IMG/VR virus record: IMGVR_UViG_3300021964_000012 | Span: 186,001-250,000 of that record | Strand: one strand, 5' to 3' | Length of the DNA: 64,000 nucleotides | Shown here: positions 17,257 through 42,944 of the stretch, piece by piece | Layout: each line of letters opens with the position of its first letter | How positions within the stretch are numbered: the first letter of the stretch is position 1 | Notes under the pieces: generated by a model | Seen by the model: the letters and a program-made list of their open reading frames with translations, nothing else | The model's database searches: none | Told to the model about the DNA's origin: nothing | Program-made: the position numbers and the translations under genes

Positions 17257-17484
17257 TTATCGTAAATTTGGGTTGTTTGACATTTTCAACTCTATAAACG
17301 TTTTGAATGCTAGGTCAGGTACGTAAAACCAAACTTTTCTTGGTTCATATAACCAACCTGGATGTTTGAATTTTTTACGTATTCCACGTTGACCTTTCCA
17401 GTCATTTCCAAACCAACGTTTGAGTTCTCGTATAATATCATACCATTCATCTATGGTTTGTAAAGAAATATAAATTTTATGCAT
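17257..17484 (-). CDS. Hypothetical protein
   Basis: 75-aa ORF translationally coupled to the ligase. Confidence 0.55.
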   Translation of the reverse strand: MHKIYISLQTIDEWYDIIRELKRWFGNDWKGQRGIRKKFKHPGWLYEPRKVWFYVPDLAFKTFIELKMSNNPNLR

Positions 17485-18869
17485 TAGATTTTCTCGCCTG
17501 CTTCAAATCCTCTAAATCTTTCAAATCTTGGAAATCTCAAACTGTATGTTCCGTCTTGATTCTGAGTAACTGCGTCTGCCTTTACTTCAACAACATAACC
17601 AACTAGACTATCTTTTCTAGTCCAAAAATCATCCCTATCACTATCAGACAAGCCGCTTCCAACGTTAACACGTATGGTGCGATTGTCGTCAACACCTTCG
17701 CATACAAGAGCTCCCAAACGTCCGGCATTTCTTCCTGTTCCTTCTTCAATGTCAATTACCTCCAAGTCTACTGTTATAACTGGCTTCCACTTCATCCAAA
17801 ATGTACTACGTCTACATTCGTATGGAGCATCAAGTTTCTTAATCATAATGCCTTCGTATCCTTCAGCAACACAGTCATTTGCATACTTTGCCATAAATTC
17901 GTGTGCTTCAGGTTCGTCTAGGTTAATTTGCTTACCTTTAACCATAACAACATTTTGCATTTGTACTCTATTTACTATACTTTCTAATGCAAGTAGTCTA
18001 TCAATTTGACTTGTGTTACTAAAGCCACGTTTGAAATCCTCTAGGTGCATAAAATCAAACACATTAAACACACTGTCAGTTGCAGTATGGTCTTTTTTAG
18101 TAGCACCTCTCATAAGTTCTTGAAAGCTCTTGCCAGTAATCTCACCATCAATTACAATATCATCAGTATCGTGTGATCTAAATGTGTCTGCTATCTTAGC
18201 AAGTTCTTGTGCAATGTGTGGGAAATTTTCAAACTCTTTACCGTTTCTACTGTACAAGTTTACAGTACCATTTGCATGGATGATTGCAATAGTTCTCACA
18301 CCATCTAACTTTGGCTCAATCATAACTTCACCAGCAAGTTTCTTAGGATGTCCTTTTGAGTCTGTTGCTAGTTGTACTTCAAACACAGGAATCTTCCATT
18401 CTGTTTTGCCAACGATTTTGTTAAGTGTTTTACTTGTGATACCACAACGTAAATCTTTTATAAGCACACGTCTAGCAAGTAGATTCCATTGATCACTGTC
18501 AAACTTTTCACTCATTAGTTCTACTGCTTCTCTGGCAGCATTACCTGTAATAGTTCTTGTACGTAAACTTTCACATAATCCCCAAAAAGATACCCATGGA
18601 TTTTCTCTGTGTTCATAGCCAGATGTTTCAGCAACTTGTTTTATGTTATACATGAAGTATGGATTATATGCTAGGTAGCAGTTGTACAAAAAGCACTCTG
18701 CACTATGACTACCAAGTCTAGCCGCCACAAGTGCTTTTTCAATTACACCTTCTTTGTGTAAGCGACTATTGCTTTCCTCGAGATCTTGTATCCAATCGCA
18801 AGCCACTTGTAATCCATTATAATTTTTTGAAGTATATTTTATTTTGTTTAGCACGAGTGATGTCTCCAT
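17484..18869 (-). CDS. ATP-dependent DNA ligase
   Basis: Motif I EPKLDGVR, IDGEI, EGIMIK, MKWKP and an OB domain (SLRFPRF). Confidence 0.95.
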   Translation of the reverse strand: METSLVLNKIKYTSKNYNGLQVACDWIQDLEESNSRLHKEGVIEKALVAARLGSHSAECFLYNCYLAYNPYFMYNIKQVAETSGYEHRENPWVSFWGLCESLRTRTITGNAAREAVELMSEKFDSDQWNLLARRVLIKDLRCGITSKTLNKIVGKTEWKIPVFEVQLATDSKGHPKKLAGEVMIEPKLDGVRTIAIIHANGTVNLYSRNGKEFENFPHIAQELAKIADTFRSHDTDDIVIDGEITGKSFQELMRGATKKDHTATDSVFNVFDFMHLEDFKRGFSNTSQIDRLLALESIVNRVQMQNVVMVKGKQINLDEPEAHEFMAKYANDCVAEGYEGIMIKKLDAPYECRRSTFWMKWKPVITVDLEVIDIEEGTGRNAGRLGALVCEGVDDNRTIRVNVGSGLSDSDRDDFWTRKDSLVGYVVEVKADAVTQNQDGTYSLRFPRFERFRGFEAGEKI

Positions 18870-32072: not shown

Positions 32073-32121
32073 CGGTATCTCTAAATTCTTGTTGCAAGTA
32101 TTTATAAAATCTCATTGATTT

Positions 32122-32795: not shown

Positions 32796-32828
32796 AAAAA
32801 AACCCTAGTTAATAAAAACTAGGGTTTA
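32796..32828 (-). terminator. Intrinsic terminator
   Basis: CCCTAGTT-AATAA-AACTAGGG stem with a U-tract on the minus strand. Confidence 0.8.
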
Positions 32829-32852: not shown

Positions 32853-33266
32853 TTATGCTAACTTGAAACCACCTGTTGTTACAGTTGAACTTGAACAGTC
32901 TACGCTGTTTGAACCAGCGGCTGTTAATGTTCTAATTGATGTTTGTAATGTTGATGCTGTGTATGCACCTGTTGGGTAGATACCAACTGAAATCTGTCCA
33001 CTTGTGTCATCTTCAACTTGGTATACAGCCACTGTAGATGTCTGCTGGATGTTTTCTAAAATTGCTTCTACTGCTAATCCTGTTCCAACTTCTGCTTGTA
33101 AGTCTACGGCTGAACCATCATCAATTAAAAGTTTGAAGAAGTCTAGTTTTGGACCTTGTAGGTTAACTGGAGCTGATTCAGCTAAAGCACCTGAAAGTGC
33201 ACCGTTGTTTGTGTCAATATGGAATACCTGTTGTGCATTACCATGGGTTCTTGTAAATTCTGCCAT
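32853..33266 (-). CDS. Small Thr/Ser/Gly-rich putative structural protein
   Basis: Monocistronic: late promoter at 33315-33320, hairpin leader, AGGAG RBS and its own terminator. Confidence 0.55.
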   Translation of the reverse strand: MAEFTRTHGNAQQVFHIDTNNGALSGALAESAPVNLQGPKLDFFKLLIDDGSAVDLQAEVGTGLAVEAILENIQQTSTVAVYQVEDDTSGQISVGIYPTGAYTASTLQTSIRTLTAAGSNSVDCSSSTVTTGGFKLA

Positions 33267-33317: not shown

Positions 33318-34964
33318 TTACCTTTTTACCCTCATTAATGACCTACGCATAAACTCATAGAATTCGTTCTGCAAACCGGTTTTACGCATCTGTAGCATAA
33401 GTCTTTGACGAATTGTGTTTTTGTCTCTTGGTGTTTGTCTTTCCCAGTTTGAGATTTGTCTACGCATTTGTATCAGTGGCGCAGGCAGAAAATCTTCCAT
33501 CTGGCGTTGTAACATCAACATCATGTAGCTGTAATCACTATTGTTGAATTCTCTTTTCATTATCTGTCGTAGATTACGTTTCAGTCTAAGTTCAGGTATT
33601 GTAATTTGTGCGTTTTGTACAACTCTGTCTTTGAACTTTTCTGGCTTCATCAGTATAGCAATTACATTGTAGAGATCTGGTTGAGAAGTTCTAAATCCAG
33701 GCCAGTTCTGTAAATTCATTATTTCTTCTGCTATTCGGGCAGCATACGCAGGATCACTGTTTACAAATATTTGCAATGCTAACAGTTGTTCAAACAGTTG
33801 CTCACCTAGTTGTTTCAATGTCAATCCATTTAGATGTCTTGGTGTTCTATATGCACGACTTTCTGTCAACCAATCAAAAGCAATTTTTTCTTTCTCTTTG
33901 CTTTCTGTCAGTCCTTTGACACGTGCAATAGCATTCCATCTTTGACTTACAGTGTCTACCCATTCCCATTTGTCGCCTGTAAATGCACTTACGCCTTTTA
34001 CAAATATATCCCATTCGCCTCTGTGTATATCGTTATCATCTAGGTGTCTTGATATTTTGTATTCTAATCCATTGTGCGTCATCAAATATGCACCTGGCTC
34101 TTTAGGATGCTTTTTAGTTGCTCCTTCGCTGACAGTAGTTTTCATAATTACTTCTGGCATTTTCATATGTGAAATATTACTACCAAATGGTACGATACTT
34201 TTTTCGTACCTACGTGCTAGATCTATTTTTTCTTCTTCATCATCAGTGCGATAAAACTGGTTAGCAATTGCCATGTCTGCAACTACTGTGCCCGCAGGAG
34301 GGTCAATAAATGTAGGGCGATATAGATTTACTTTTTTTAGATCTTTATTGGTTAAACTATAAAACGTGCTTTCCCATTTGTCTGGATGAAGTGCATAACG
34401 ACCATTGCGTTGTGGCACATAGTCTACTAATTCATCATCTCCATCATGGAACTTGCCTAGTTTTTGTAAATGCACAACTTTGCCTTCAGTTGGTTTTTTC
34501 AGATAGTACTCTAGTCTTCCTCTTTCTGTGCTTACATCAACTTCTTCTCTAACTGTGCTACGTGGCATTTCATAACGTGTGCCAATTCTGAATGGCGAGT
34601 CTTCAACTGTGAATACTCTGTTTGGTGTGTCAAAATTTTTCTTACGCATTACAGTTTTAGCAATTAAATCTAGTTCGTCATTGTCTTTGTCTAACACTAA
34701 TGCAAAAGGCACATTTATGTCTGTCTGTAAATCACGCATGACCGCTTCACTGTCAGGACCCATCTGTGCAATAGGTTTGCCATAACGTTTGCGTTCTTGT
34801 TTAAACAGTCTTGTAAGCTCTGCTGGCACTATTGGTTTTTCATTACGTTCACTGTTTACTCTATCCATAAAGTGTTTTGTAAACTCCACATCGATACCTA
34901 CATCAGCAAATATTCTATCTGCGAATGTTTCTAGTTGCTTCATATCGACTGCGGTTACTGGCAT
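33318..34964 (-). CDS. Modular putative internal head protein with an N-terminal HFxDR (RNase-toxin-like) module
   Basis: FTKHFMDRVNSERN...I...EL..LF and LIAKTVMRK. Modules are separated by VREE, VSEG, LTES and LTES. Confidence 0.45.
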   Translation of the reverse strand: MPVTAVDMKQLETFADRIFADVGIDVEFTKHFMDRVNSERNEKPIVPAELTRLFKQERKRYGKPIAQMGPDSEAVMRDLQTDINVPFALVLDKDNDELDLIAKTVMRKKNFDTPNRVFTVEDSPFRIGTRYEMPRSTVREEVDVSTERGRLEYYLKKPTEGKVVHLQKLGKFHDGDDELVDYVPQRNGRYALHPDKWESTFYSLTNKDLKKVNLYRPTFIDPPAGTVVADMAIANQFYRTDDEEEKIDLARRYEKSIVPFGSNISHMKMPEVIMKTTVSEGATKKHPKEPGAYLMTHNGLEYKISRHLDDNDIHRGEWDIFVKGVSAFTGDKWEWVDTVSQRWNAIARVKGLTESKEKEKIAFDWLTESRAYRTPRHLNGLTLKQLGEQLFEQLLALQIFVNSDPAYAARIAEEIMNLQNWPGFRTSQPDLYNVIAILMKPEKFKDRVVQNAQITIPELRLKRNLRQIMKREFNNSDYSYMMLMLQRQMEDFLPAPLIQMRRQISNWERQTPRDKNTIRQRLMLQMRKTGLQNEFYEFMRRSLMRVKR

Positions 34965-35104
34965 TATCTTTTGCCTTGTCCTCTATACATTTTGTAGGAT
35001 CGTCTTTTGTGTTTGTTCATTTTACATAAAGACGGCTTTCTTCCTATGCTGGTTTTTACAAATGTAGGTTCGTGTGTTGAACTTGTTGCATACATTTTTG
35101 CCAT
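34964..35104 (-). CDS. 46-aa basic peptide MAKMYATSSTHEPTFVKTSIGRKPSLCKMNKHKRRSYKMYRGQGKR (missing from the ORF track)
   Basis: My translation. TAATG overlaps with both neighbours; the YRGQG tail is typical of small marine T4-like phage proteins. Confidence 0.75.
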   Translation of the reverse strand: MAKMYATSSTHEPTFVKTSIGRKPSLCKMNKHKRRSYKMYRGQGKR

Positions 35105-36984
35105 TATGCTACTCCTGGGTTATTAGCCGCAAAGTTTACACGGCTGAATTTATCTCTATCAACAAGTTTTATGCCGTCTCCGACATAGCCCTCATGTCCG
35201 CTTACGCCTTTAATATCTGCTTTTACATCTTGATCTTGATCGTCAAGATCTTTAATCAATTTATCTTTTAGCAGTGCTATATTTACAAAAGAACTAAACA
35301 ACGCACTCACTGCACCTTGATTTTCGTTCATCCATTCAATTATTCTTGGTGCTTGTGTAGGCATTTTTTGTGTTACCCAAGGACCAAAATCTTTTACCAT
35401 GTTTGTAAAACCACCTTGACGTACCTTAAAATTTATGTATTGCTTCATCAACTTTGGAGTGCTGGTAATTTTCCTATTTCTTAGCTCTGATGGATTTAAA
35501 AATGCATCAATTGCAGGTGCATATTCGTTAAAGGTGTCTTGTATTTTAATTAACAGTCCTTTGTCTAATTCTATTGCACTTCCAGTATCTTTCATTGTAC
35601 TGTCTAATGCTAATACACCTGGAACCTTGTCGAGAACCCGAGTTGTTACTGGACGCACTGTTCCTTTAGGCTTGTCTATTTCTGTATGAACTGCAATACC
35701 TACGTTACTGTTTCCTATTTGTTTTCCAAGTGGCGTATCAGCACTTACTCTGTAGGTTACTTGGTTAGGTGTAAACACATATGAGTTGTCTTCTACAGGT
35801 GGTGTTGCACTGTACAACAGATCTGCTTGAACGAAACCTCTAAAATGCTGCGGCACAGCTCTGCTTAATAACGGAAATAACTTTTGATATACACCGATTA
35901 AATCTGTGTAATCACCCTTACGATTACTAAACACTCTTGCCATATCTTTTGCACTAGTAGCCAAACCATTATATCCTGTGGCTACAAATCCGCCTTTGTC
36001 TGTAAGAATAAACTGTCCATTGTTATCTCTGCCGAATACTATAGCAGGTTTGCCATCCCATTTGATAGTGTTAACTTTTGCTGGTTCTTCTGCACTGCGT
36101 CTTATTGCATCAATTGCTTGTTTAATTCCTTTGGATCCCATGTCAAAAACTAGATCTTCAGGATGTTCAATCCTAGCACCTTCAGCCAAATATGGTTTGT
36201 AATGAGCAGGGTTGTCTGAGACTACTTCCATGCCTTGATTGATGATTCTATCACGTAGTCTTGCCAACCAATCACTGCCGCCTTCTACAACTGATTCAAA
36301 GGTAAATCCTTCTCTTTCAGCATAACCACGGAAGTCTTCAAGTTTTTGATCACGTTGTGGATCATTTTGTAACGCACCTAGTATTGCTTCTACACTGAAC
36401 AAATCTTTTTCAGTAGCACCTTTGTTAAGTATTACTCTTGCAATGTCTGCTGGTAGATCTGTTACAAATTCGTTTGTTGATCTACTAACCAATCCTTGAT
36501 TTGGTGAAAGTTTATATCCGGCAGCTTTTGCAATTGAATTCATCAGTACATTACGTGTAACACCTTTGTAATCACTAGCTGGATCAGCACGCATTAGAAA
36601 CTTTGAAAAGTCTGGCTTCTGAACAAACATAAAGTCAGTCTGTATATAGCCTTGATCTTCTCTGCCTGTGATTGGTGCTTTGAAATGAACACTTATTCCA
36701 CTCTTACGCACCCATTCTCTAGGATCAAAGCCGTGAGATTCAGCCCACTGAGTTAGTTTGTTTTCAAGTTCTTGTTTGCTTATCGTTTTAGGGTCAACTG
36801 CTAGATCTAAATCACCTGATGTTGGTTTTTGTCCTGTGCTACCAAGCATGTTATCCATGAGAGACAATCCAGTGAGTTGCTCTAACCAAAGTACAGTAGG
36901 CTTTACATCTGTTTGATTAATACGCTTAGTTTGTATAGCACCATCAGCATCTTTGAAGACGTTGCCACCCTCTTTTAGTTTCAT
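35104..36984 (-). CDS. Fusion of a Pol-beta-family nucleotidyltransferase and an RNA-ligase-like adenylation domain
   Basis: N-domain LGS..QKPTSGDLDL with a third Asp in QTDF. C-domain KWDG (motif I), QADLLY (III), HEGYV (IV) and IKLV (V). No OB fold. Confidence 0.7.
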   Translation of the reverse strand: MKLKEGGNVFKDADGAIQTKRINQTDVKPTVLWLEQLTGLSLMDNMLGSTGQKPTSGDLDLAVDPKTISKQELENKLTQWAESHGFDPREWVRKSGISVHFKAPITGREDQGYIQTDFMFVQKPDFSKFLMRADPASDYKGVTRNVLMNSIAKAAGYKLSPNQGLVSRSTNEFVTDLPADIARVILNKGATEKDLFSVEAILGALQNDPQRDQKLEDFRGYAEREGFTFESVVEGGSDWLARLRDRIINQGMEVVSDNPAHYKPYLAEGARIEHPEDLVFDMGSKGIKQAIDAIRRSAEEPAKVNTIKWDGKPAIVFGRDNNGQFILTDKGGFVATGYNGLATSAKDMARVFSNRKGDYTDLIGVYQKLFPLLSRAVPQHFRGFVQADLLYSATPPVEDNSYVFTPNQVTYRVSADTPLGKQIGNSNVGIAVHTEIDKPKGTVRPVTTRVLDKVPGVLALDSTMKDTGSAIELDKGLLIKIQDTFNEYAPAIDAFLNPSELRNRKITSTPKLMKQYINFKVRQGGFTNMVKDFGPWVTQKMPTQAPRIIEWMNENQGAVSALFSSFVNIALLKDKLIKDLDDQDQDVKADIKGVSGHEGYVGDGIKLVDRDKFSRVNFAANNPGVA

Positions 36985-38873
36985 GTTGTAACCGCATCTA
37001 AATACTGTAGTATTTGTTTTTTAATTCCAGGATTGCTATTGATTTGTTGAGCCAGTGTTATTACAGGATCATCACTGGCAATTTTCTTTAGATCAGGCAT
37101 CTTTATACCAGCAGTTTGAAATGCTTGTTGCATCACTGCTCCGTCTATGCCTTGAGTTGTAAGCCATTGTGCAATTTGTACACTGTCAGTTGGTTTGCCG
37201 GCTTTTGTCCATGCTTTCATAAGTTTATCAGCAGTTACTTTAGTTGTGATATTTGTACCGACTTGACGAGCTTTTTGTCCAAGTTTGGTAACACCTTTAC
37301 CAATTTGTTGTTTTAAGTTTGAAAGCATACCGCCTGGTGCTTCCATAAGATCTTGCTTGTAGGCAACTGCAACAAAAAGTTTTGTAATTTGATCTTCTGT
37401 GAGTGCATTCGCAGTACTGTGTCCGCTCTGCAACAATGATCTTCGTTTTGCTAGTTGCTCTGGAGATAGGTTCTTAAGTCTTTCTGCTTGAGCAGCGGCT
37501 TTTGCATCTAAATTTTCAGCGGCACCGGGTACGTTATCTTTTAGCCATTGTGTAGCCTCTGGACTCATAGCCTGTGTTCCTGGAAATTGTGAGTTGAATT
37601 GATCTATTAGTTCTGGGTCTGTAATTGGTATATCACCACGTACGACAATACCTTCGCCTGTGCCGCCTGGTGCAACTAGATCAGCTTTTGCTTGTAGGTC
37701 CGCTCTGCCTTGTGCAACTTTATCCCCTACACTACCACTTTGAGCAGTTGCAGTTCTATCAGCACCTGTTCCACCACTTACTTCATCAGGGTCAACAACA
37801 TCACCACCAGTTGTACCGTCTAAATGACTTTGTAGTTGTTTATTGTATTGATCTATTATATCGTCAGGAATATTGTCTTGATTTGGAAGGTCAATCAACC
37901 CATCCATTTGTTCTGGTGTTAAAGGTTGTCCTGGTTGATATGATGCAAGATTCAGTCCATTTTCATCATACATAGGTCCTAGTTGTGCATTGTATTGATC
38001 AATTACATTCTGCGGTATACCGTCTTGATTTGGCAAATCCTGTATCATGTTCATTTCAGCAGTTGATAGTTTACCATCAAAGTCTGCAACAATATCATCT
38101 ATACTAGTAGCACCTGCTATATCTTGTATGCCGGCAGCTCGCATATCTGCGGCCGTTCCGGCGTCAACATCGGTGATTCCGTCGAGGCTATTTCCTCCAC
38201 CAGCAAATCCTCCTTGTGTTGATTGTGCAGTATCAGCAGTTGCTCCAACAGCATCTCCGCCACCACGCACTAGATCGCCAAGTGTACTTGCACCGGCCGC
38301 CAACGCACCAGTTTTACCTGCACTGTATAACGCACTTCTTATGTCTTTACCTTGTAACAGTTGATCTGTAAGTTTAAACAAACCTAATGCGGCAGCACCA
38401 CCTAAACCTGCACCACTTACACCAGCGGCTGCAATCAATGCGGCATAGATAAAACCTTGCATAATAGGATGTTTCTCTGCAAACTGACGATATTTTTTAA
38501 CAGCTTGCATTACACGACCTTCGTCGCCACCTGCACTTTGCTTCAGTTGTTCGGCGGCGGCATCATATTTTTGTGCAAAGCCTTGCATAGGTCCAGAATT
38601 GTAAACTTTTGCCTTTAGATCATTCCAAGGTTTAACAATTGCTTGATTAACTTTGTCTAATCCTTTACCAACTGCCGTACGGTTTGATCCAGCCTCAGTT
38701 GCAGTTTTTTCTATTTCTGCAAACAAACCTTGTATCTGTTGTGGTGAAAGTGCAGCTTCACGAAGTTGATATCCCACGTTTTCCCAAACAAGATAGGTAT
38801 CGAGATTGGTTCGGTTAAGACTTTCTAGTAATGCATGTCTTGATTCATGTTTTTTTAATTCGGTGATCCTCAT
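36981..38873 (-). CDS. Large Ala/Gly-rich putative internal/ejected virion protein
   Basis: MRITEL, LLES, LREA and LMEA sites; a hydrophobic Gly/Ala helix; an internal 22-aa duplication. Confidence 0.5.
   Translation of the reverse strand: MRITELKKHESRHALLESLNRTNLDTYLVWENVGYQLREAALSPQQIQGLFAEIEKTATEAGSNRTAVGKGLDKVNQAIVKPWNDLKAKVYNSGPMQGFAQKYDAAAEQLKQSAGGDEGRVMQAVKKYRQFAEKHPIMQGFIYAALIAAAGVSGAGLGGAAALGLFKLTDQLLQGKDIRSALYSAGKTGALAAGASTLGDLVRGGGDAVGATADTAQSTQGGFAGGGNSLDGITDVDAGTAADMRAAGIQDIAGATSIDDIVADFDGKLSTAEMNMIQDLPNQDGIPQNVIDQYNAQLGPMYDENGLNLASYQPGQPLTPEQMDGLIDLPNQDNIPDDIIDQYNKQLQSHLDGTTGGDVVDPDEVSGGTGADRTATAQSGSVGDKVAQGRADLQAKADLVAPGGTGEGIVVRGDIPITDPELIDQFNSQFPGTQAMSPEATQWLKDNVPGAAENLDAKAAAQAERLKNLSPEQLAKRRSLLQSGHSTANALTEDQITKLFVAVAYKQDLMEAPGGMLSNLKQQIGKGVTKLGQKARQVGTNITTKVTADKLMKAWTKAGKPTDSVQIAQWLTTQGIDGAVMQQAFQTAGIKMPDLKKIASDDPVITLAQQINSNPGIKKQILQYLDAVTT
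37833..38043 (-). repeat. Two copies of a 22-aa module (IQDLPNQDGIPQNVIDQYNAQL / LIDLPNQDNIPDDIIDQYNKQL)
   Basis: Read directly from the translation; boundaries are approximate. Confidence 0.8.
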
Positions 38874-39877
38874 GCTATTGCTTTCTTCAATTTCTGTTTG
38901 CTCGGAGCATCTAATTTATCTATTGCACCTATCGTACCGGGGGATGCTTTTTCGATAGCCGCACGTAGTCCTGCCATCTTTGGATCATTGAGATCAATTT
39001 TTTGTCCACCAATCTTAGCAGTAGGAACTTTTGTTTTTTGAGCAACGTCTTTTGCAGTGGTTGATACTATCTTACCTGTACTGTCTCTTTGCGGTGCGGT
39101 TGACTGTTTAGCTTGTTGACTTTTAGGAACATTGGTCATGTAACTTGGTTTGCGTTTTTTCCAATCATCATTGGCTTGATCCATGCCTTGCTTCACTGCA
39201 CTTGTTTTGCCCTTGTTCATTGCTTGCGAAATTGGATCAGTTCCTTGACCTTGCTTGTTTTGATTACGTGCAATGCTTTTCTGTATTGCTTTTTGATCCT
39301 GGTTAGCAGCAGAGGCTTGTGCACCTGTTGTTCCTAGTTTTTTTTCTAGTTCTGCTTTTCTTTGTGCTTCGGCATCGGTTTTTTGTAACTTTGCAGCCAA
39401 TCCAGCAGCCTTATTACGTTGTGTAATACTACCACTTTGAGCGTTTTTTCCAATACTTGCACCCCCAACACCGGTGTAGGTTTGTTGACTGCGATCAGGA
39501 AGACCACTTTGCCAATTATAACTGGTTACATCGTCAACTTTGTCCAGTGTTTTTTGTGCAAGTGCATCTGCTTTGCCAATTCCAGTTTGTACTGCACCAG
39601 CGGCTCTTTTTAGAAACCCTGGACCTTGTGCTTGTGCTTTTGCAGTAGGTGCTTTATAATCTTTTCCAGCAACTGCTTTTTGTGTTTGTTGTTTGCCTTG
39701 TTGGAATGACTTGCCTAATGCATCAGCACTACGCTTAGTAACACCTTTGATCTTTTGTCCTGCTCCTTGAACCGCACCAAGGCCTTGGCCAATTTTTTTA
39801 GTGATGGCTTTAGAGAAATCACCAATTTCGTCTAAGAGCTCTTCTTGTAGTTGTTGTTCTGTTAATCTATTTGTCAT
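38870..39877 (-). CDS. Basic Lys/Gln/Ala-rich putative internal head protein
   Basis: RLTE, LQEE and LLDE at the N-terminus, followed by a low-complexity basic body. Confidence 0.5.
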   Translation of the reverse strand: MTNRLTEQQLQEELLDEIGDFSKAITKKIGQGLGAVQGAGQKIKGVTKRSADALGKSFQQGKQQTQKAVAGKDYKAPTAKAQAQGPGFLKRAAGAVQTGIGKADALAQKTLDKVDDVTSYNWQSGLPDRSQQTYTGVGGASIGKNAQSGSITQRNKAAGLAAKLQKTDAEAQRKAELEKKLGTTGAQASAANQDQKAIQKSIARNQNKQGQGTDPISQAMNKGKTSAVKQGMDQANDDWKKRKPSYMTNVPKSQQAKQSTAPQRDSTGKIVSTTAKDVAQKTKVPTAKIGGQKIDLNDPKMAGLRAAIEKASPGTIGAIDKLDAPSKQKLKKAIA

Positions 39878-40127
39878 TGGCTCTTTTCACTGATCTTGCA
39901 AACTTACTCGGATCACGCAAACGAATAGCATTCAGTAGTTTGCGTTGTAGATTTTCACTTTGCTCTGCATCATATAACTCGTCGATCTGTTCCATTAAAC
40001 GGATAGCACTGGCAATCACATTGCTGGCACGACTTTCTACGATGTATCCACGCTCTTGACGTTTAGCATAGCGTTCTACGTAGATGCCGTCTAATTCTTC
40101 AAAGATGCTACGAGTCTTTTTTTGCAT
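39867..40127 (-). CDS. Hypothetical protein
   Basis: Start moved to MQKKTR (AAGGA RBS, TAAATA at 40145-40150). IFEE and IVES sites. Confidence 0.55.
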   Translation of the reverse strand: MQKKTRSIFEELDGIYVERYAKRQERGYIVESRASNVIASAIRLMEQIDELYDAEQSENLQRKLLNAIRLRDPSKFARSVKRANDK

Positions 40128-40210
40128 TTTTGTTCCTTTTGCAGTATTTAGCAGTTTTTGCTGATTCAAATATTTATAGTAGCATAGATTCTGTAGTAAA
40201 TATACCTATT

Positions 40211-40240
40211 AAGGCATCTTTAGGCAAACATAGGCAAACA
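40211..40240 (+). repeat. Perfect tandem 10-mer TAGGCAAACA x2 (a third AGGCA lies one period upstream) directly before the dnaE-like ATG
   Basis: 40221-40230 and 40231-40240 are identical. AGGCA starts at 40212, 40222 and 40232. Confidence 0.85.
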
Positions 40241-41940
40241 TGAAAACAGAAATAGAACAGATACAATTATTATTAGAACAATTTAGAAGACCAACTCCCG
40301 AAGGCGAAGAATATCAAAACAGACTAGCAGAAGAATTTGAAATTATACTTCAGCAACGTTTTACAGATTACTTTCTCAAAATAAGACTCATACTTGATCT
40401 CAACGAAGACATACCACACATGACCAGAGGCAGTGCTGGTAGCAGTTTGGTTTGCTATCTCATGGGCATAACTGATGTTGATCCAATTGAATGGAACATA
40501 CCACTAGCAAGATTTTTAAATCCATACAGAGATGACTTGCCTGATGTGGATATTGATATACCTCATCACAAACAAGAACTTGCAATGCAACGTGTGTTTG
40601 ACAAATGGCCAACACAGAGTGCTAGGATATCAAACTATGTGCTTTACAGAGAGAAGAGTGCAAAACGCGAAGCTGCCAAACGCCTTGGAGCAAAAGGCAG
40701 ACTGCCAAAAGATATAGACTACGCAAAACTAGGCGTTGACGAACAAGAAGCACGTCGTATTGAACGCAAACTCATGGGCAAAAAACGTTGTATCAGCAAA
40801 CACTGTGGTGGTGTGCTGGTTTTTGATCGTCCACTACCTAAAAGCCTGTTCCGTGATGACAATCTTATCTTGCTTGACAAAAACGAAGTAGAGGATTTGG
40901 AACATCTAAAAGTAGACATACTTGCAAACAGAGGATTATCACAGTTACTAGAAATAGATCCTCACACAAGACTGGATGCATATCCAAAACAGGATGAACG
41001 TGTTGCTGATTTGTTGTGTAGAGGTGATGTACTTGGTGTAACACAAGGTGAGTCGCCAACTATGAAGAGACTGTTTCGTGCATTGCAACCAACCGGAGTT
41101 GAGGACTGTGTGTTTGCCAGTGCATTAGTGCGTCCAGTTGCTATGGAAGGCAGACGCAAGGCCAGTTGGTTCCGTGACTGGAGTGAAAAAGGCATACAAA
41201 AGAATGCAATAGTATATGAAGATGATGCCATACATAAAATAATGAAATTGATTGGCATATCACCATACGAAGCAGATATGTATCGTCGTGCTTTTGCAAA
41301 AAAGAATGAAGAAAAGATGATGCAGTTTATGGCACGCTTAGGTGATCATCCAGACAAGCATGATATCTATGAACAAATGCAATCACTAAGTGGGTTTGGC
41401 TTGTGTAGAGCACACGCAGTTAATTTAGGCAGACTTATATGGGCATTAGCATATCACAAAGTATACAATCCAAAAGAGTTTTGGCGTGCTTGTTTAAAAC
41501 ACTGCCAAGGATCATATGCACGTTGGGTATATCGTAACGAAGCAAAACGTGCTGGTTGGGATCTGCGTGAACTAGGTTTTGACAACTGGATTACAGAAGA
41601 TCCAGTTGAGAGTTTCAAACAACATGGTGCATGGAATAGTCCTGGCTTTTTGCCAAACATGGGATTGCAAAATTTATTCTTAGACAAGTTTCAGTTTGCA
41701 GGTATAATTGCCGCCAGCAGAGTGTTTAAAAGTGATATAAAAAGTTATATACACTTCATCACACTAGGTGTTGGTGAAGGTCGCTATGTGGATCTTGTTG
41801 TTGACAAACCAGTGAAATACGGTAAAGGAACTGTAGTCTTAGGAGAAGGAGAACTACACAGCAGAGACAACAGCGAGTATCTCAAAGTAAAACGCAAATC
41901 AGTAAAAGTGATGTCAATTGACGACTATGTTCAGAGCTAA
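40240..41940 (+). CDS. dnaE: PHP-less, compact DNA polymerase III alpha (DnaE-like)
   Basis: RGSAGSSLV, RFLNP.RDDLPDVDID, KHCGGV, KVDIL, GVTQGES and GFGLCRAHA. All three catalytic Asp are present. No PHP domain; 566 aa. Confidence 0.85.
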   Translation: MKTEIEQIQLLLEQFRRPTPEGEEYQNRLAEEFEIILQQRFTDYFLKIRLILDLNEDIPHMTRGSAGSSLVCYLMGITDVDPIEWNIPLARFLNPYRDDLPDVDIDIPHHKQELAMQRVFDKWPTQSARISNYVLYREKSAKREAAKRLGAKGRLPKDIDYAKLGVDEQEARRIERKLMGKKRCISKHCGGVLVFDRPLPKSLFRDDNLILLDKNEVEDLEHLKVDILANRGLSQLLEIDPHTRLDAYPKQDERVADLLCRGDVLGVTQGESPTMKRLFRALQPTGVEDCVFASALVRPVAMEGRRKASWFRDWSEKGIQKNAIVYEDDAIHKIMKLIGISPYEADMYRRAFAKKNEEKMMQFMARLGDHPDKHDIYEQMQSLSGFGLCRAHAVNLGRLIWALAYHKVYNPKEFWRACLKHCQGSYARWVYRNEAKRAGWDLRELGFDNWITEDPVESFKQHGAWNSPGFLPNMGLQNLFLDKFQFAGIIAASRVFKSDIKSYIHFITLGVGEGRYVDLVVDKPVKYGKGTVVLGEGELHSRDNSEYLKVKRKSVKVMSIDDYVQS

Positions 41941-42944
41941 CAGGTACCACAGTTATCATCGCAAATGACTAACCGTCCATTTTCATAATCTTTAAGTATC
42001 CAACTTTGTTCCACTTTGCCAAACCATTCAATACATTGTTCCAAAGTGTAAACTAATGCATTATTTTTTTCAATCATTGGAATTAATTGACTGTTGGCAG
42101 CTTGATGATACTGCCCTTTCCCGTATGTCTTAGGGTAAAACCCAGTGTAACAACAAGGATACACATCTCCATTGGCAGAGATATAAATGCTTTTAAGTTT
42201 TTTTGTTTCACAGATTACACTGGCGCAAGGTTTTCTTCCTGGAATAATATCTTCTAATAAAATATCATCAGTTTTTTTACTGTCAAGAAGTTTTTCAAAA
42301 TTGGTTTCTCCTGAGTATGATCCTAATGTATGAGCCAGGTTACCTTTCTTGTCAAATACAGGAGCAGTGTTTCTTCCTTCGTCAACTATTTTAAATTTTG
42401 AAAATTCCAGTTGAATGCTCAGTTGTTTACATTCTTCGATTTGATGACGATTATGATCAAATTCTATAAACTGCCAAATTGCATTTCCTCCGTTTGAAAT
42501 AAAAGTTTTAGCATTTTTAATCACAGTTTTCCAAGAAGTATCTTGACGATATAAACTGTGGGTGTCTTCTAATCCATCAATTGCAAAATTAACCGTGGCA
42601 CTACTGCTGGCAAGGCTTTTCCAAAAATCTTCTTTTCTAGCTCCGCCGTTGGTGTTAATCGAAATATTCATTTTTGGATTATTATCTCTAAAGTATTTTA
42701 TAATATCTTGACCTTCGGGATTCATCACAATATCGCCAAAATTTCCATTAACACGAATTGATTTCAATTGTAGCAGAAATTTTTTTGAAAATATTTTTTT
42801 TGTTTGCTCTAATGTCAAATACGTTTCAGGATAACCTCCATTATAAGGATACCCCCAGAAGTTTCGAGGACACCAAGGACATCTCGCATTACACAAAGAT
42901 GCAATTTCTAAATGAACATCACGAATTTCATTGTAAGATATCAT
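41937..42944 (-). CDS. Radical SAM protein with SPASM/twitch-like C-terminus
   Basis: CNARCPWC, GNFGD, NTNGG, DVYPCC and terminal C..NC. Confidence 0.9.
   Translation of the reverse strand: MISYNEIRDVHLEIASLCNARCPWCPRNFWGYPYNGGYPETYLTLEQTKKIFSKKFLLQLKSIRVNGNFGDIVMNPEGQDIIKYFRDNNPKMNISINTNGGARKEDFWKSLASSSATVNFAIDGLEDTHSLYRQDTSWKTVIKNAKTFISNGGNAIWQFIEFDHNRHQIEECKQLSIQLEFSKFKIVDEGRNTAPVFDKKGNLAHTLGSYSGETNFEKLLDSKKTDDILLEDIIPGRKPCASVICETKKLKSIYISANGDVYPCCYTGFYPKTYGKGQYHQAANSQLIPMIEKNNALVYTLEQCIEWFGKVEQSWILKDYENGRLVICDDNCGTC

What the first reader, a model, noticed from the sequence alone, without database searches (positions are those of the whole stretch)
33318..36984. Adjacent RNase-like, nucleotidyltransferase and RNA-ligase-like modules: injected RNA repair or editing kit
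Seen: 35104-36984 fuses a Pol-beta NTase (GS, DLD, third D) to a ligase adenylation domain with motifs I, III, IV and V and no OB fold. The two domains are separated by candidate cleavage sites (VVEG, LAEG). The next large gene begins with an HFxDR..R / KTV module reminiscent of DUF4258/BECR RNases, which is a weaker call. Known: Rnl2-type ligases repair RNA cut by defence nucleases, and kinetoplastid editing uses endonuclease plus TUTase plus ligase. Inference: a pre-packaged tRNA/rRNA repair or tailing system acts before phage transcription.
Basis: partly seen in the sequence, partly recalled or inferred. Interest (0 to 1): 0.7.

Follow-up and report, generated by a model that had tools for sequence, protein, structure and literature searches.

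The report
Phage-carried polymerase X–ligase repair pair
A gene of an abundant marine T4-like jumbo phage fuses a miniature family-X-type polymerase to an RNA-ligase-type sealing enzyme, and several lines of indirect evidence suggest that the pieces are cut apart by the head protease and carried inside the virus particle, so that a "fill and seal" repair kit may enter the cell together with the DNA.

Summary
The sequence observation holds. On the minus strand, 35104-36984 encodes 626 aa: a nucleotidyltransferase domain (aa 6-230), a disordered linker (231-269) and Pfam DUF6267 (270-626).

The interpretation needs three corrections.
- The RNase call for the next gene is unsupported.

"Pre-packaged" gains real support:
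- The phage has a T4-type capsid protein and prohead protease.
- Every module starts after a conserved (L/I/V)-x-E|G site.
- Stand-alone relatives carry leaders like those of T4 internal proteins.
- A late promoter-like motif and a terminator bracket a six-gene unit.
- The PolX-like homologue of phage PA5oct is annotated as found in virions by mass spectrometry.

Whether the substrate is DNA or RNA is open. I favour nicks and gaps in duplex DNA.

The parts
35104..36984 (-). Gene P0001, 626 aa: PolX-like module + linker + DUF6267 ligase-like module
   Evidence: ORF and translation. Pfam DUF6267 at aa 272-620, E 2.7e-44. AlphaFold model pLDDT 90. 626-aa homologues with the same start are abundant in marine metagenomes.
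36295..36969 (-). PolX-like module, aa 6-230 (catalytic D58, D60, D117; GS...SGDLD; thumb with conserved R144, S150, G156, G164)
36178..36294 (-). Disordered linker, aa 231-269, with VVE|G (E234) and LAE|G (E267) flanking a conserved helix WLARLRDRI
   Evidence: pLDDT under 50. Alignment of the linker across homologues. The helix peptide also ends some stand-alone PolX-like proteins and starts some stand-alone DUF6267 proteins.
35107..36177 (-). DUF6267 = ligase-type adenylyltransferase module, aa 270-626 (H274-x-E-D, K308 motif I, D388 III, E598-G-Y-V IV, K606..R610 V; helical insert about 475-581; no OB domain)
33318..34964 (-). Gene P0002, 548 aa, three modules: A (aa 1-137, nt 34554-34964), B (138-276, nt 34137-34553), C (277-548, nt 33321-34136). 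Module C starts after TVSE|G.
   Evidence: Relatives lack B, or carry an NT5C 5'-nucleotidase module between B and C. Module A occurs alone as an abundant 125-136 aa protein and is fused to many different enzymes. Fold unresolved.
36981..38873 (-). P0003, 630 aa, acidic low-complexity protein with a G/A-rich hydrophobic stretch; overlaps P0001 by 4 nt
   Evidence: No Pfam, PHROG or NCBIfam family.
38870..39877 (-). orf335, A/K/Q/G-rich, pI 10, low-complexity protein (resembles an internal head protein)
   Evidence: No family hit.
39867..40127 (-). orf86, first gene of the unit; homologue of PA5oct EST35_0225
40171..40178 (-). TATAAATA, T4/cyanophage-type late promoter-like motif, 43 nt upstream of orf86
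   Evidence: Only 13 TATAAATA sites in the genome against about 49 expected, and 7 of them lie just upstream of genes. NATAAATA: 54 sites against 146 expected, 40 upstream of genes including portal and sheath.
32853..33266 (-). orf137, last gene of the unit
32800..32827 (-). Intrinsic terminator-like hairpin (11-bp stem followed by a T run) closing the six-gene unit

Best explanation
P0001 is a two-enzyme "fill and seal" protein.

**The two enzymes**
- A minimal family-X-like polymerase (palm plus thumb, as in ASFV Pol X) adds nucleotides to a 3'-OH in a gap, using the D58/D60/D117 metal site.
- The DUF6267 domain is an ATP-type ligase adenylyltransferase related to Rnl2-type nick-sealing RNA ligases. 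It would become AMP-charged on K308 and seal the remaining nick.

**Expression and delivery**
- The gene sits in a six-gene late transcription unit of a T4-like marine jumbo phage.
- I infer that the T4-type prohead protease cuts the protein after E5, E234 and E267 inside the prohead.
- The separated enzymes would then travel in the head and be ejected with the genome.
- The most economical substrate is then nicked or gapped duplex DNA of the incoming genome (single-strand-break repair). RNA or RNA-DNA hybrid nicks are not excluded.

**Shown**: the folds and motifs, their conservation, the modular architecture, the conserved junction motif, the presence of the protease, the promoter-like motif and terminator, the synteny, and the virion annotation of the PA5oct homologue.

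**Inferred**: catalysis, cleavage, packaging of this particular protein, and the substrate.
For: **Enzyme identity**
- Ligase motifs are invariant. EGYV equals T4 Rnl2 motif IV. All C-domain fold hits are ligases.

**Functional coupling of the two modules in independent genomes**
- Fused here and in hundreds of metagenomic relatives, in both orders.
- Two genes apart in PA5oct: EST35_0228 has EKIDG and VEGYV..VKIVDK.
- Adjacent in Atu_ph07: gp065 is PolX-like (hhalign 99.4%), and gp066 gives a full-length but sub-threshold PF09414 RNA_ligase match.
- A functional Pol beta-ligase fusion is known in Phaeocystis globosa virus (PMC5537341).

**Packaging**
- Peptidase_S77 (E 5e-30) and Gp23 capsid protein (E 4.5e-100) are in the genome.
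- 34 of 34 internal PolX-like modules start with (L/I/V)-x-E-GG.
- 130 of 136 DUF6267 starts have h-x-E 1-11 residues before RIxHxED, with G/A/S following in 107.
- 37 of 39 stand-alone DUF6267 proteins carry short leaders such as MKIIELLTE|A. T4 ipII and ipIII both begin MKTYQEFIAE.
- A late promoter-like motif and a terminator bracket the unit.
- The block is colinear with PA5oct EST35_0224-0240. There, 11 of the 14 genes between the orf86 homologue and the exonuclease are annotated 'structural protein, ESI-MS/MS'. These include EST35_0231, the PolX-like homologue (hhalign 98.7%, E 1.8e-16; PMC7318152).
- In cyanophage S-SM1, the cytidylyltransferase-like partner of DUF6267 (T4-GC190) was detected in virions (PMC3037559).
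Against: - There are no proteomic data for this phage.
- The ligase-like partner is not flagged by mass spectrometry in PA5oct, and T4-GC71 (= DUF6267) carries no proteomic flag in the three cyanophage virion proteomes.
- The PA5oct virion list includes 7 'virion-unrelated enzymes', so carry-over from the lysate is possible (PMC7318152).
- The genes lie among replication genes: DNA polymerase, helicase, primase, exonuclease and RNR.
- Sequence profiles do not connect either domain to PolX or ligase families. There were no PDB hits with profile HMMs and no Pfam PolX or RNA_ligase hit.
- N-terminal h-x-E-(G/A/S) is not enriched genome-wide (30 of 372 proteins, about chance).
- The closest ligase relatives are RNA ligases, not DNA ligases. 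The phage already has a canonical ATP-dependent DNA ligase.
Confidence: 0.5

Rival explanations
1. RNA repair kit. The NTase restores one or two nucleotides at damaged RNA 3' ends, as RlaP does. The Rnl2-like ligase then reseals tRNA or other RNA cut by host defence ribonucleases. The kit could be packaged or not.
For: - The nearest structural relatives of the C-domain are RNA ligases (NgrRnl, REL1, Trl1, Rnl2, Rnl3, Rnl1), with motif IV identical to Rnl2 and no OB fold.
- The Atu_ph07 neighbour of the PolX-like gene gives a weak PF09414 RNA_ligase match.
- RlaP, a Pol beta-superfamily NTase linked to RNA ligases, adds 1-2 NMP to damaged RNA (bioRxiv 10.64898/2025.12.29.696909; PMC7824862).
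- On other marine contigs, stand-alone module A lies near a CCA-adding-type NTase and an AAA_33/Zeta-type kinase.
Against: - The N-domain matches family X DNA polymerases over palm and thumb. RNA-specific NTases match only the palm.
- There is no PF10127 (RlaP) or PF09414 match in the genome.
- The phage carries only 3 tRNA genes, and no polynucleotide kinase-phosphatase was seen in the unit.
- Co-packaging with dsDNA does not by itself point to RNA.
Confidence: 0.2
2. A cytoplasmic replication or repair enzyme that is not packaged. It would fill gaps and join nicks during lagging-strand maturation or base excision repair. Stand-alone DUF6267 would then be the long-missing ligase of T4-like cyanophages.
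For: - The gene lies next to DNA polymerase, helicase, primase, exonuclease and RNR.
- In cyanomyoviruses, DUF6267 (T4-GC71) follows gp43-UvsX-gp41.
- Those phages lack gp30 DNA ligase and mostly RNase H, and distant homologues were explicitly left open (PMC2984593, PMC1079782).
- PgV PolX-ligase performs base excision repair in vitro (PMC5537341).
Against: - The conserved h-x-E|G junctions and T4-CTS-like leaders have no role in this model.
- The unit has a late promoter-like motif, not an early or middle context.
- The PA5oct homologue is annotated as a virion protein within a block of virion proteins.
- This phage already has an ATP-dependent DNA ligase.
Confidence: 0.2
3. The ligase-like and NTase-like folds are used for something other than joining polynucleotides. 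Possibilities are nucleotidylylation of a protein or small molecule, or a morphogenetic role like the tail-fibre attachment activity of T4 RNA ligase 1 (gp63; own knowledge).
For: - The modules shuffle with cytidylyltransferase-like, NT5C, PAP2, HAD-like and NTP_transf_2 domains, which act on nucleotides or small molecules.
- The unit appears to be expressed late among virion proteins.
- The second Lys of ligase motif V is replaced (K-L-V-D-R).
Against: - The full catalytic sets of both superfamilies are invariant.
- A PolX-type thumb is a device for reading a template.
- The pairing of polymerase-like and ligase-like modules recurs in three phage lineages.
Confidence: 0.1

Closest known systems
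African swine fever virus DNA polymerase X (PDB 5hr9), with the ASFV ligase in viral base excision repair
   Different: No detectable sequence similarity. Here the polymerase is fused to the ligase-type domain, is encoded by a bacteriophage and carries putative protease sites. Activity is untested.
[quoted passage not shown]
   Same: A viral single polypeptide that joins a family X polymerase core to a ligase. It has been shown to repair BER intermediates by concerted gap filling and ligation.
   Different: The PgV ligase part is LigA-like and NAD+-dependent, and its polymerase keeps dRP lyase activity. Here the ligase part is an ATP-type, Rnl2-like domain without an OB fold. The 8-kDa lyase domain is absent, and the two parts are probably separated by proteolysis.
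T4 RNA ligase 2 / T. brucei REL1 / Naegleria NgrRnl (nick-sealing RNA ligases)
   Same: An adenylyltransferase domain with motifs I, III, IIIa, IV and V and no OB fold. Motif IV EGYV is identical to T4 Rnl2. These are the best fold matches of the C-domain.
   Different: No profile-level sequence match. There is a 100-residue helical insert between motifs IIIa and IV, an extra invariant H-x-E-D motif before motif I, and the second motif V lysine is replaced.
RlaP (PF10127) NTase with RNA ligases in RNA repair operons (PMC7824862; bioRxiv 10.64898/2025.12.29.696909)
   Same: A Pol beta-superfamily nucleotidyltransferase genetically coupled to a ligase of the covalent NTase superfamily. This gives the same logic of restoring missing nucleotides and then sealing.
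   Different: PF10127 does not match. The fold is closest to templated family X polymerases, thumb included, not to RNA tailing enzymes.
T4 internal proteins IPII/IPIII and Alt (capsid-targeting leader, cut by gp21, ejected with the DNA)
   Same: A T4-type protease and capsid are present. Stand-alone relatives have 9-12 residue leaders ending in L-x-E, resembling MKTYQEFIAE of ipII and ipIII. The cargo is enzymatic, as with Alt (own knowledge).
   Different: Here several enzymes are strung together as a polyprotein with internal sites. Neither cleavage nor packaging has been shown for this protein.
Polyvalent proteins of phages and conjugative elements (PMC5512222)
   Same: Variable multi-domain proteins that travel with the invading DNA and are processed into units. 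The Atu_ph07 neighbour gp067 has a weak LPD3 match.
   Different: That survey reports pol-beta NTase domains only in conjugative-element proteins and did not see RNA ligases associating with the polyvalent-protein 2H domains. No MuF, portal or peptidase domain is fused here. Processing would be done by the prohead protease.

Membership tests
Family X DNA polymerases | Palm with hG(G/S)...D-x-D and a third carboxylate | tested here: met
   G48-S49, S56-G57-D58-L-D60 and D117. Conserved in 34-36 of 35-36 homologues.
Family X DNA polymerases | Palm followed by the PolX thumb (C-terminal subdomain) | tested here: met
Family X DNA polymerases | Match to sequence models of the family | tested here: not met
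   No Pfam family on aa 1-270 at E up to 1. A profile of 27 N-domains finds no PDB chain at E up to 10.
Family X DNA polymerases | 8-kDa dRP-lyase and fingers (HhH) subdomains | tested here: not met
   The module has only about 225 residues and aligns from Pol beta residue 142 onward. These subdomains are absent, as in ASFV Pol X.
Family X DNA polymerases | Template-directed DNA synthesis in gaps | not testable with these tools
   Needs a primer-extension assay.
Covalent nucleotidyltransferases (polynucleotide ligases, Rnl2-like) | Motif I KxDG with the AMP-accepting lysine | tested here: met
   K308-W-D310-G311, invariant in 50 of 50 homologues.
Covalent nucleotidyltransferases (polynucleotide ligases, Rnl2-like) | Motifs III, IIIa, IV and V in order | tested here: met
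   D388, F404/Y411, E598-G-Y-V and K606..R610 are all invariant or nearly so. Motif IV is identical to T4 Rnl2. The second Lys of motif V is replaced.
Covalent nucleotidyltransferases (polynucleotide ligases, Rnl2-like) | Ligase adenylyltransferase fold | tested here: inconclusive
Covalent nucleotidyltransferases (polynucleotide ligases, Rnl2-like) | Match to Pfam RNA_ligase (PF09414) or other ligase sequence models | tested here: not met
   No hit. hhalign against single sequences of T4 Rnl2 and the phage's own DNA ligase was uninformative.
Covalent nucleotidyltransferases (polynucleotide ligases, Rnl2-like) | Self-adenylylation and nick sealing | not testable with these tools
   Needs biochemistry.
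Pfam DUF6267 (PF19782) | Score above the gathering threshold | tested here: met
   152.5 bits against a cut-off of 27; aa 272-620 cover profile positions 4-374 of 376.
RlaP (PF10127) RNA-ligase-associated NTase | Match to the family model | tested here: not met
   No match in P0001 or anywhere in the genome at E up to 1.
DUF4258 / BECR-fold RNases (for module A of P0002) | Match to the family model or the BECR fold | tested here: not met
   No such Pfam hit in 22 family members at E up to 10. The fold is unresolved (pLDDT 41), so the fold criterion itself is inconclusive.
T4-type capsid-targeted, protease-processed internal proteins | T4-type prohead protease and gp23-type capsid in the same genome | tested here: met
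   PF03420 E 5.1e-30 and PF07068 E 4.5e-100.
T4-type capsid-targeted, protease-processed internal proteins | Leader or junction ending in (L/I)-x-E | tested here: met
   Sites at E5, E234 and E267 in P0001. 34 of 34 internal PolX-like starts, 130 of 136 DUF6267 starts and 37 of 39 stand-alone leaders carry the motif. T4 ipII and ipIII leaders for comparison. That gp21 cuts after this Glu is own knowledge.
T4-type capsid-targeted, protease-processed internal proteins | Presence of the processed protein in virions | tested here: inconclusive
   Known only for a homologue: PA5oct EST35_0231 is annotated 'structural protein, ESI-MS/MS' (PMC7318152). There are no data for this phage, and the ligase-like homologues are not flagged.

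The most novel reading that the evidence does not exclude
Abundant marine T4-like phages (this jumbo phage, its many metagenomic relatives and the cyanomyoviruses) may share a pool of enzyme modules: PolX-like polymerase, DUF6267 ligase, cytidylyltransferase-like, HAD/NT5C and PAP2 phosphatases, and the small module A. These modules would carry T4-type capsid-targeting leaders or h-x-E|G junctions and would be loaded into the head as polyproteins. After cutting by the prohead protease they would be ejected with the genome as a ready-made heal, fill and seal system for strand breaks. That system would restore sunlight- or nuclease-damaged phage DNA before any phage gene is expressed. DUF6267 would also be the unrecognised ligase of cyanomyoviruses.
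Probability: 0.25. Interest if true: 0.8.

Novelty: new variant of a known kind. Interest (0 to 1): 0.62.

Why it matters
- DUF6267 is a core gene of T4-like cyanophages and of very abundant uncultured marine phages, yet no paper in the searched library mentions it. Assigning it to the ligase superfamily gives a concrete candidate for the DNA ligase that cyanomyoviruses were reported to lack (PMC2984593).
- The review of phage DNA polymerases that I read lists ASFV Pol X as the only viral family X example and names no bacteriophage one (PMC8775771). A minimal PolX in phages would be a new enzyme source and a new repair route.
- If the enzymes really ride in the capsid, this would extend the set of known ejected phage proteins (anti-restriction factors, ADP-ribosyltransferases, RNA polymerases) to a nucleic-acid repair machine.
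- That would bear on how phage particles survive DNA damage in sunlit water and on how they meet host nucleases at entry.
- The conserved h-x-E|G junctions also offer a simple sequence rule for finding head-packaged cargo in T4-like phage metagenomes.

Tried and rejected
- **Sequence searches of PDB.** A single-sequence search and profile searches for each domain gave no meaningful hit. The annexin and other matches at E above 0.01 are noise.
- **hhalign of the DUF6267 profile** against the phage's own DNA ligase and against T4 Rnl2 as single sequences had no power.
- **Nearby DNA.** megablast of the region against the phage collection found nothing.
- **AlphaFold of P0002** with 30 sequences failed (pLDDT 41). 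I ran no fold search on it, so no statement on its fold is possible.
- **Family searches for module A.** Pfam on 22 module A proteins and NCBIfam on all six proteins of the unit gave nothing, so the DUF4258/BECR idea is rejected as unsupported, not disproved.
- **Module A in the cyanophage cytidylyltransferase.** hhalign of module A against S-WAM1 proteins was negative.
- **Genome-wide count of N-terminal h-x-E-(G/A/S).** 30 of 372 proteins, about chance. The motif is informative only through its conservation at module borders.
- **Paralogues.** None of either P0001 module in the genome.
- **Repair partners in the genome.** No DenV (PF03013), Rnl2-type ligase (PF09414) or RlaP (PF10127).
- **Expression timing in the literature.** A search for the cyanophage gene's timing found nothing usable.
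- **Contigs with stand-alone module A.** Their neighbours are not homologous to the P0001 modules or to P0002 modules B and C.
- **Correction.** The correct count is 11 of 14.
- **Not used.** Complex prediction and read mapping, because no claim here depended on them.

Full report
**Setting**

The window is bases 186001-250000 of a single 328,292-bp virus contig with direct terminal repeats, rated complete. The contig encodes a T4-type major capsid protein (Pfam Gp23, E 4.5e-100) and a T4-type prohead protease (Peptidase_S77, E 5.1e-30). By capsid protein, its nearest cultured relatives are the Pseudomonas jumbo phage PA5oct group and a Vibrio jumbo phage, at about 65% identity. Relatives of the genes studied here are very common in marine metagenomes, Tara samples included.

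**Check of the observation**

Both genes of the finding are on the minus strand. The ORF at 35104-36984 gives 626 aa (P0001), and the ORF at 33318-34964 gives 548 aa (P0002).

- GS and S-G-D58-L-D60, with the third Asp at D117.
- K308-W-D-G, GFVQAD388LLY, HE598GYV and K606LVDR.
- VVEG at 232-235 and LAEG at 265-268.
- In P0002, H31-F-x-D-R..R-N and K103-T-V.

These residues are nearly invariant in an alignment of 60 homologues that go down to 31% identity, so they are not chance strings. The protein stops 16 residues after motif V, so no OB domain follows.

**What P0001 is**

Pfam sees only DUF6267 on aa 272-620 (E 2.7e-44) and nothing on the N-terminal 270 residues. PHROGs gives a family of unknown function. 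An AlphaFold model built from the 60-sequence alignment is confident (mean pLDDT 90). It shows two globular parts joined by the only disordered stretch, aa 231-269.

*N-domain.* An exhaustive structural comparison with 48,161 PDB chains puts ten family X DNA polymerases on top. They are:
- Pol beta (three entries), Leishmania Pol beta and TdT;
- Thermus PolX, Pol lambda and ASFV Pol X;
- Pol mu and Deinococcus PolX.

Sequence models do not reach this far. The RlaP family of RNA-ligase-associated NTases does not match either.

*C-domain.* All ten matches in the top 50 are polynucleotide ligases of the covalent nucleotidyltransferase superfamily:
- NgrRnl and REL1;
- two Trl1 entries and two T4 Rnl2 entries;
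- two archaeal Rnl3-type enzymes;
- T4 Rnl1 and an Aquifex ligase.

**The two modules belong together**

Among 1,519 cluster representatives, the two modules occur in three ways:
- alone (about 250 aa and about 370 aa);
- fused in either order;
- fused to cytidylyltransferase-like, NT5C, DUF5661 and HAD-like domains.

In PA5oct they are separate genes two positions apart. EST35_0231 is PolX-like (hhalign 98.7%, E 1.8e-16). EST35_0228 has EKIDG and VEGYV..VKIVDK. In Agrobacterium phage Atu_ph07 the PolX-like gp065 (hhalign 99.4%) directly follows gp066. That protein gives a full-length but sub-threshold match to Pfam RNA_ligase and shares the KxDG..GRD string.

The recurring linkage argues for one pathway: add nucleotides, then seal. 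A functional viral precedent for a Pol beta-ligase fusion exists in Phaeocystis globosa virus, where the ligase part is NAD+-dependent (PMC5537341).

**Evidence bearing on "pre-packaged"**

1. P0001 has exactly three (L/I/V)-x-E-(G/A/S) sites, at E5, E234 and E267. Each sits at a module border in unstructured sequence.
2. The motif is conserved where the rest of the linker is not.
   - All 34 internal PolX-like modules in other proteins begin (L/I/V)-x-E-GG.
   - 130 of 136 distinct DUF6267 starts have h-x-E within 1-11 residues of the RIxHxED motif, followed by G, A or S in 107.
3. 37 of 39 stand-alone DUF6267 proteins carry short leaders, with modal lengths of 9 and 12 residues, such as MKIIELLTE|A or MRLFEFTQPLME|A.
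   - The T4 internal proteins ipII and ipIII both begin MKTYQEFIAE.
   - That this leader targets proteins to the prohead core and is removed by gp21 after the Glu of (L/I)-x-E is established T4 knowledge, which I cite from memory.
4. The phage's own capsid protein, protease and scaffold carry similar sites near their N-termini, for example ALLE|GLQG in the capsid protein.
5. NATAAATA, the late-promoter core of T4-like phages, is strongly depleted in the genome (54 sites against about 146 expected). 40 of the 54 sites lie within 70 nt upstream of a gene on the same strand, including the portal and sheath genes.
   - A full TATAAATA lies 43 nt upstream of orf86.
   - From there, six genes follow with 4- or 11-nt overlaps or short gaps: orf86, orf335, P0003, P0001, P0002 and orf137.
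   - They run to a strong terminator-like hairpin at 32800-32827.
   - Two of the partners are low-complexity proteins without any family, one basic (pI 10) and one acidic.
6. The block is colinear with PA5oct: helicase, orf86 homologue, PolX-like gene, orf355 homologue, exonuclease.
   - In PA5oct, 11 of the 14 genes between the orf86 homologue and the exonuclease are annotated 'structural protein, ESI-MS/MS', the PolX-like one among them.
   - The annotation rests on mass spectrometry of purified particles (PMC7318152).
7. In cyanomyoviruses, DUF6267 is the core gene T4-GC71, directly upstream of the 'cytitidyltransferase' T4-GC190. In re-annotated S-PM2 the DUF6267 gene product (591 aa) also carries a cytidyltransferase-like domain. 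T4-GC190 was detected in S-SM1 virions (PMC3037559).

Points against packaging:
- There are no data for this phage.
- The ligase-like proteins themselves are not flagged in any of these proteomes.
- The PA5oct list contains some probable contaminants.
- The genes lie among replication genes.
- An N-terminal h-x-E-(G/A/S) is no more frequent in this genome than chance.

I put packaging at about 0.7.

**P0002 and the RNase call**

P0002 is a mosaic of three modules. Relatives lack module B, or have an NT5C nucleotidase inserted before module C, which again starts after V-(S/K/T)-E|G. Module A (aa 1-137) is a very common stand-alone protein of 125-136 aa.

The ESM Atlas holds a confident model of one such stand-alone protein. 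Its fold recurs at TM 0.87-0.93 as a domain of viral proteins that also carry PAP2, DUF6267, cytidylyltransferase-like or NTP_transf_2 domains, and at TM 0.65 with a GH19 domain.

Its invariant polar residues (H31, D34, R35, N37, R40, N41, K103, R107, K108) are compatible with catalysis or nucleic-acid binding. No family model matches, and my own model failed. The RNase reading is therefore unsupported. A shared adaptor or nucleic-acid-binding role is equally possible.

**Mechanism and its rivals**

The best-supported reading is a fill-and-seal pair. The PolX-like enzyme extends a 3'-OH across a gap, and the ligase-like enzyme, charged with AMP on K308, closes the nick.

The polymerase fold includes the template-reading thumb, Rnl2-type ligases act on nicks in duplexes, and the proteins probably travel with double-stranded DNA. 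I therefore favour nicked or gapped phage DNA as the substrate. This parallels ASFV Pol X plus ligase, PgV PolX-ligase and the mammalian PNKP-Pol beta-Lig3 pathway. The shuffling HAD/NT5C and PAP2 phosphatase modules could supply end healing, but that is inference only.

The rivals are:
- an unpackaged replication or repair enzyme, attractive because cyanomyoviruses lack gp30 ligase (PMC2984593, PMC1079782);
- a use other than joining polynucleotides.

**Novelty**

PolX-ligase fusions, RNA-ligase-linked NTases and protease-processed ejected proteins are each known. The following are not described, as far as the searched literature shows:
- the assignment of DUF6267 to the ligase superfamily;
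- a minimal PolX-like enzyme in bacteriophages;
- their combination as modules with T4-type processing signals.

I rate this a new variant of known kinds, of moderate to high interest. All functional steps remain to be tested.

Noticed in passing
whole genome G000; in the window e.g. 40171-40178(-), 32099-32106(-), 17254(-), 46371(-): NATAAATA is strongly depleted (54 sites against about 146 expected). 40 of the 54 sites lie within 70 nt upstream of a same-strand gene start, including the portal and tail sheath genes. This looks like a T4/cyanophage-type late promoter set that could be used to map late genes of this phage.
   Followed up: partly
window 36981-38873 (-): P0003 is a 630-aa acidic (pI 4.9) low-complexity protein. 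It has a G/A-rich hydrophobic stretch (about aa 137-170) and two copies of a DLPNQD(G/N)IP..(V/I)IDQYN.QL unit. No family matches. Its stop overlaps the P0001 start by 4 nt.
   Followed up: no
window 38870-39877 (-): orf335 is an A/K/Q/G-rich, basic (pI 10), probably disordered protein without any family. It resembles DNA-binding internal head proteins.
   Followed up: no
window 40240-41940 (+): The DNA polymerase gene is only 566 aa and matches positions 357-844 of a 1190-position PHROG profile. The polymerase may be split or truncated. It lies on the opposite strand, inserted between the helicase and the late unit when compared with PA5oct.
   Followed up: no
window 41937-42944 (-): A radical SAM / SPASM-domain protein is encoded between the DNA polymerase and the DnaB-type helicase.
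   Followed up: no
window 17484-18869 (-): A canonical ATP-dependent DNA ligase (phrog_114, E 1.4e-96) is present, so the DUF6267 domain is not the only ligase-type enzyme of this phage.
   Followed up: partly
L004:6001-12310, L005 and L006 (marine metagenome contigs): Stand-alone module A follows tail genes. After it come proteins whose N-termini (MKTFKEYISE|A, MKTFKQLHEE|E, MRHFKTHLNE|G) closely resemble the T4 ipII/ipIII leader MKTYQEFIAE. Next come a PolyA_pol/CCA-type NTase, an NT5C-like protein and a Zeta-toxin/AAA_33-type kinase. This may be another set of head-packaged enzymes.
   Followed up: partly
L010:4237-4956 (Agrobacterium phage Atu_ph07 gp067): There is a weak match (E 0.004) to LPD3, a domain of large polyvalent proteins, in the gene just upstream of the ligase-like/PolX-like pair.
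   Followed up: no
L002:5978-5984 (Synechococcus phage S-PM2): ATAAATA lies 19 nt upstream of the start of d138 (the DUF6267 gene, whose product also carries a cytidyltransferase-like domain). A second copy lies 38 nt upstream of the annotated virion structural protein d145.
   Followed up: partly
G000:C1:52502-52813 (-), outside the window: A 103-aa protein is a weak paralogue of part of module A of P0002 (phmmer E 5e-4).
   Followed up: no
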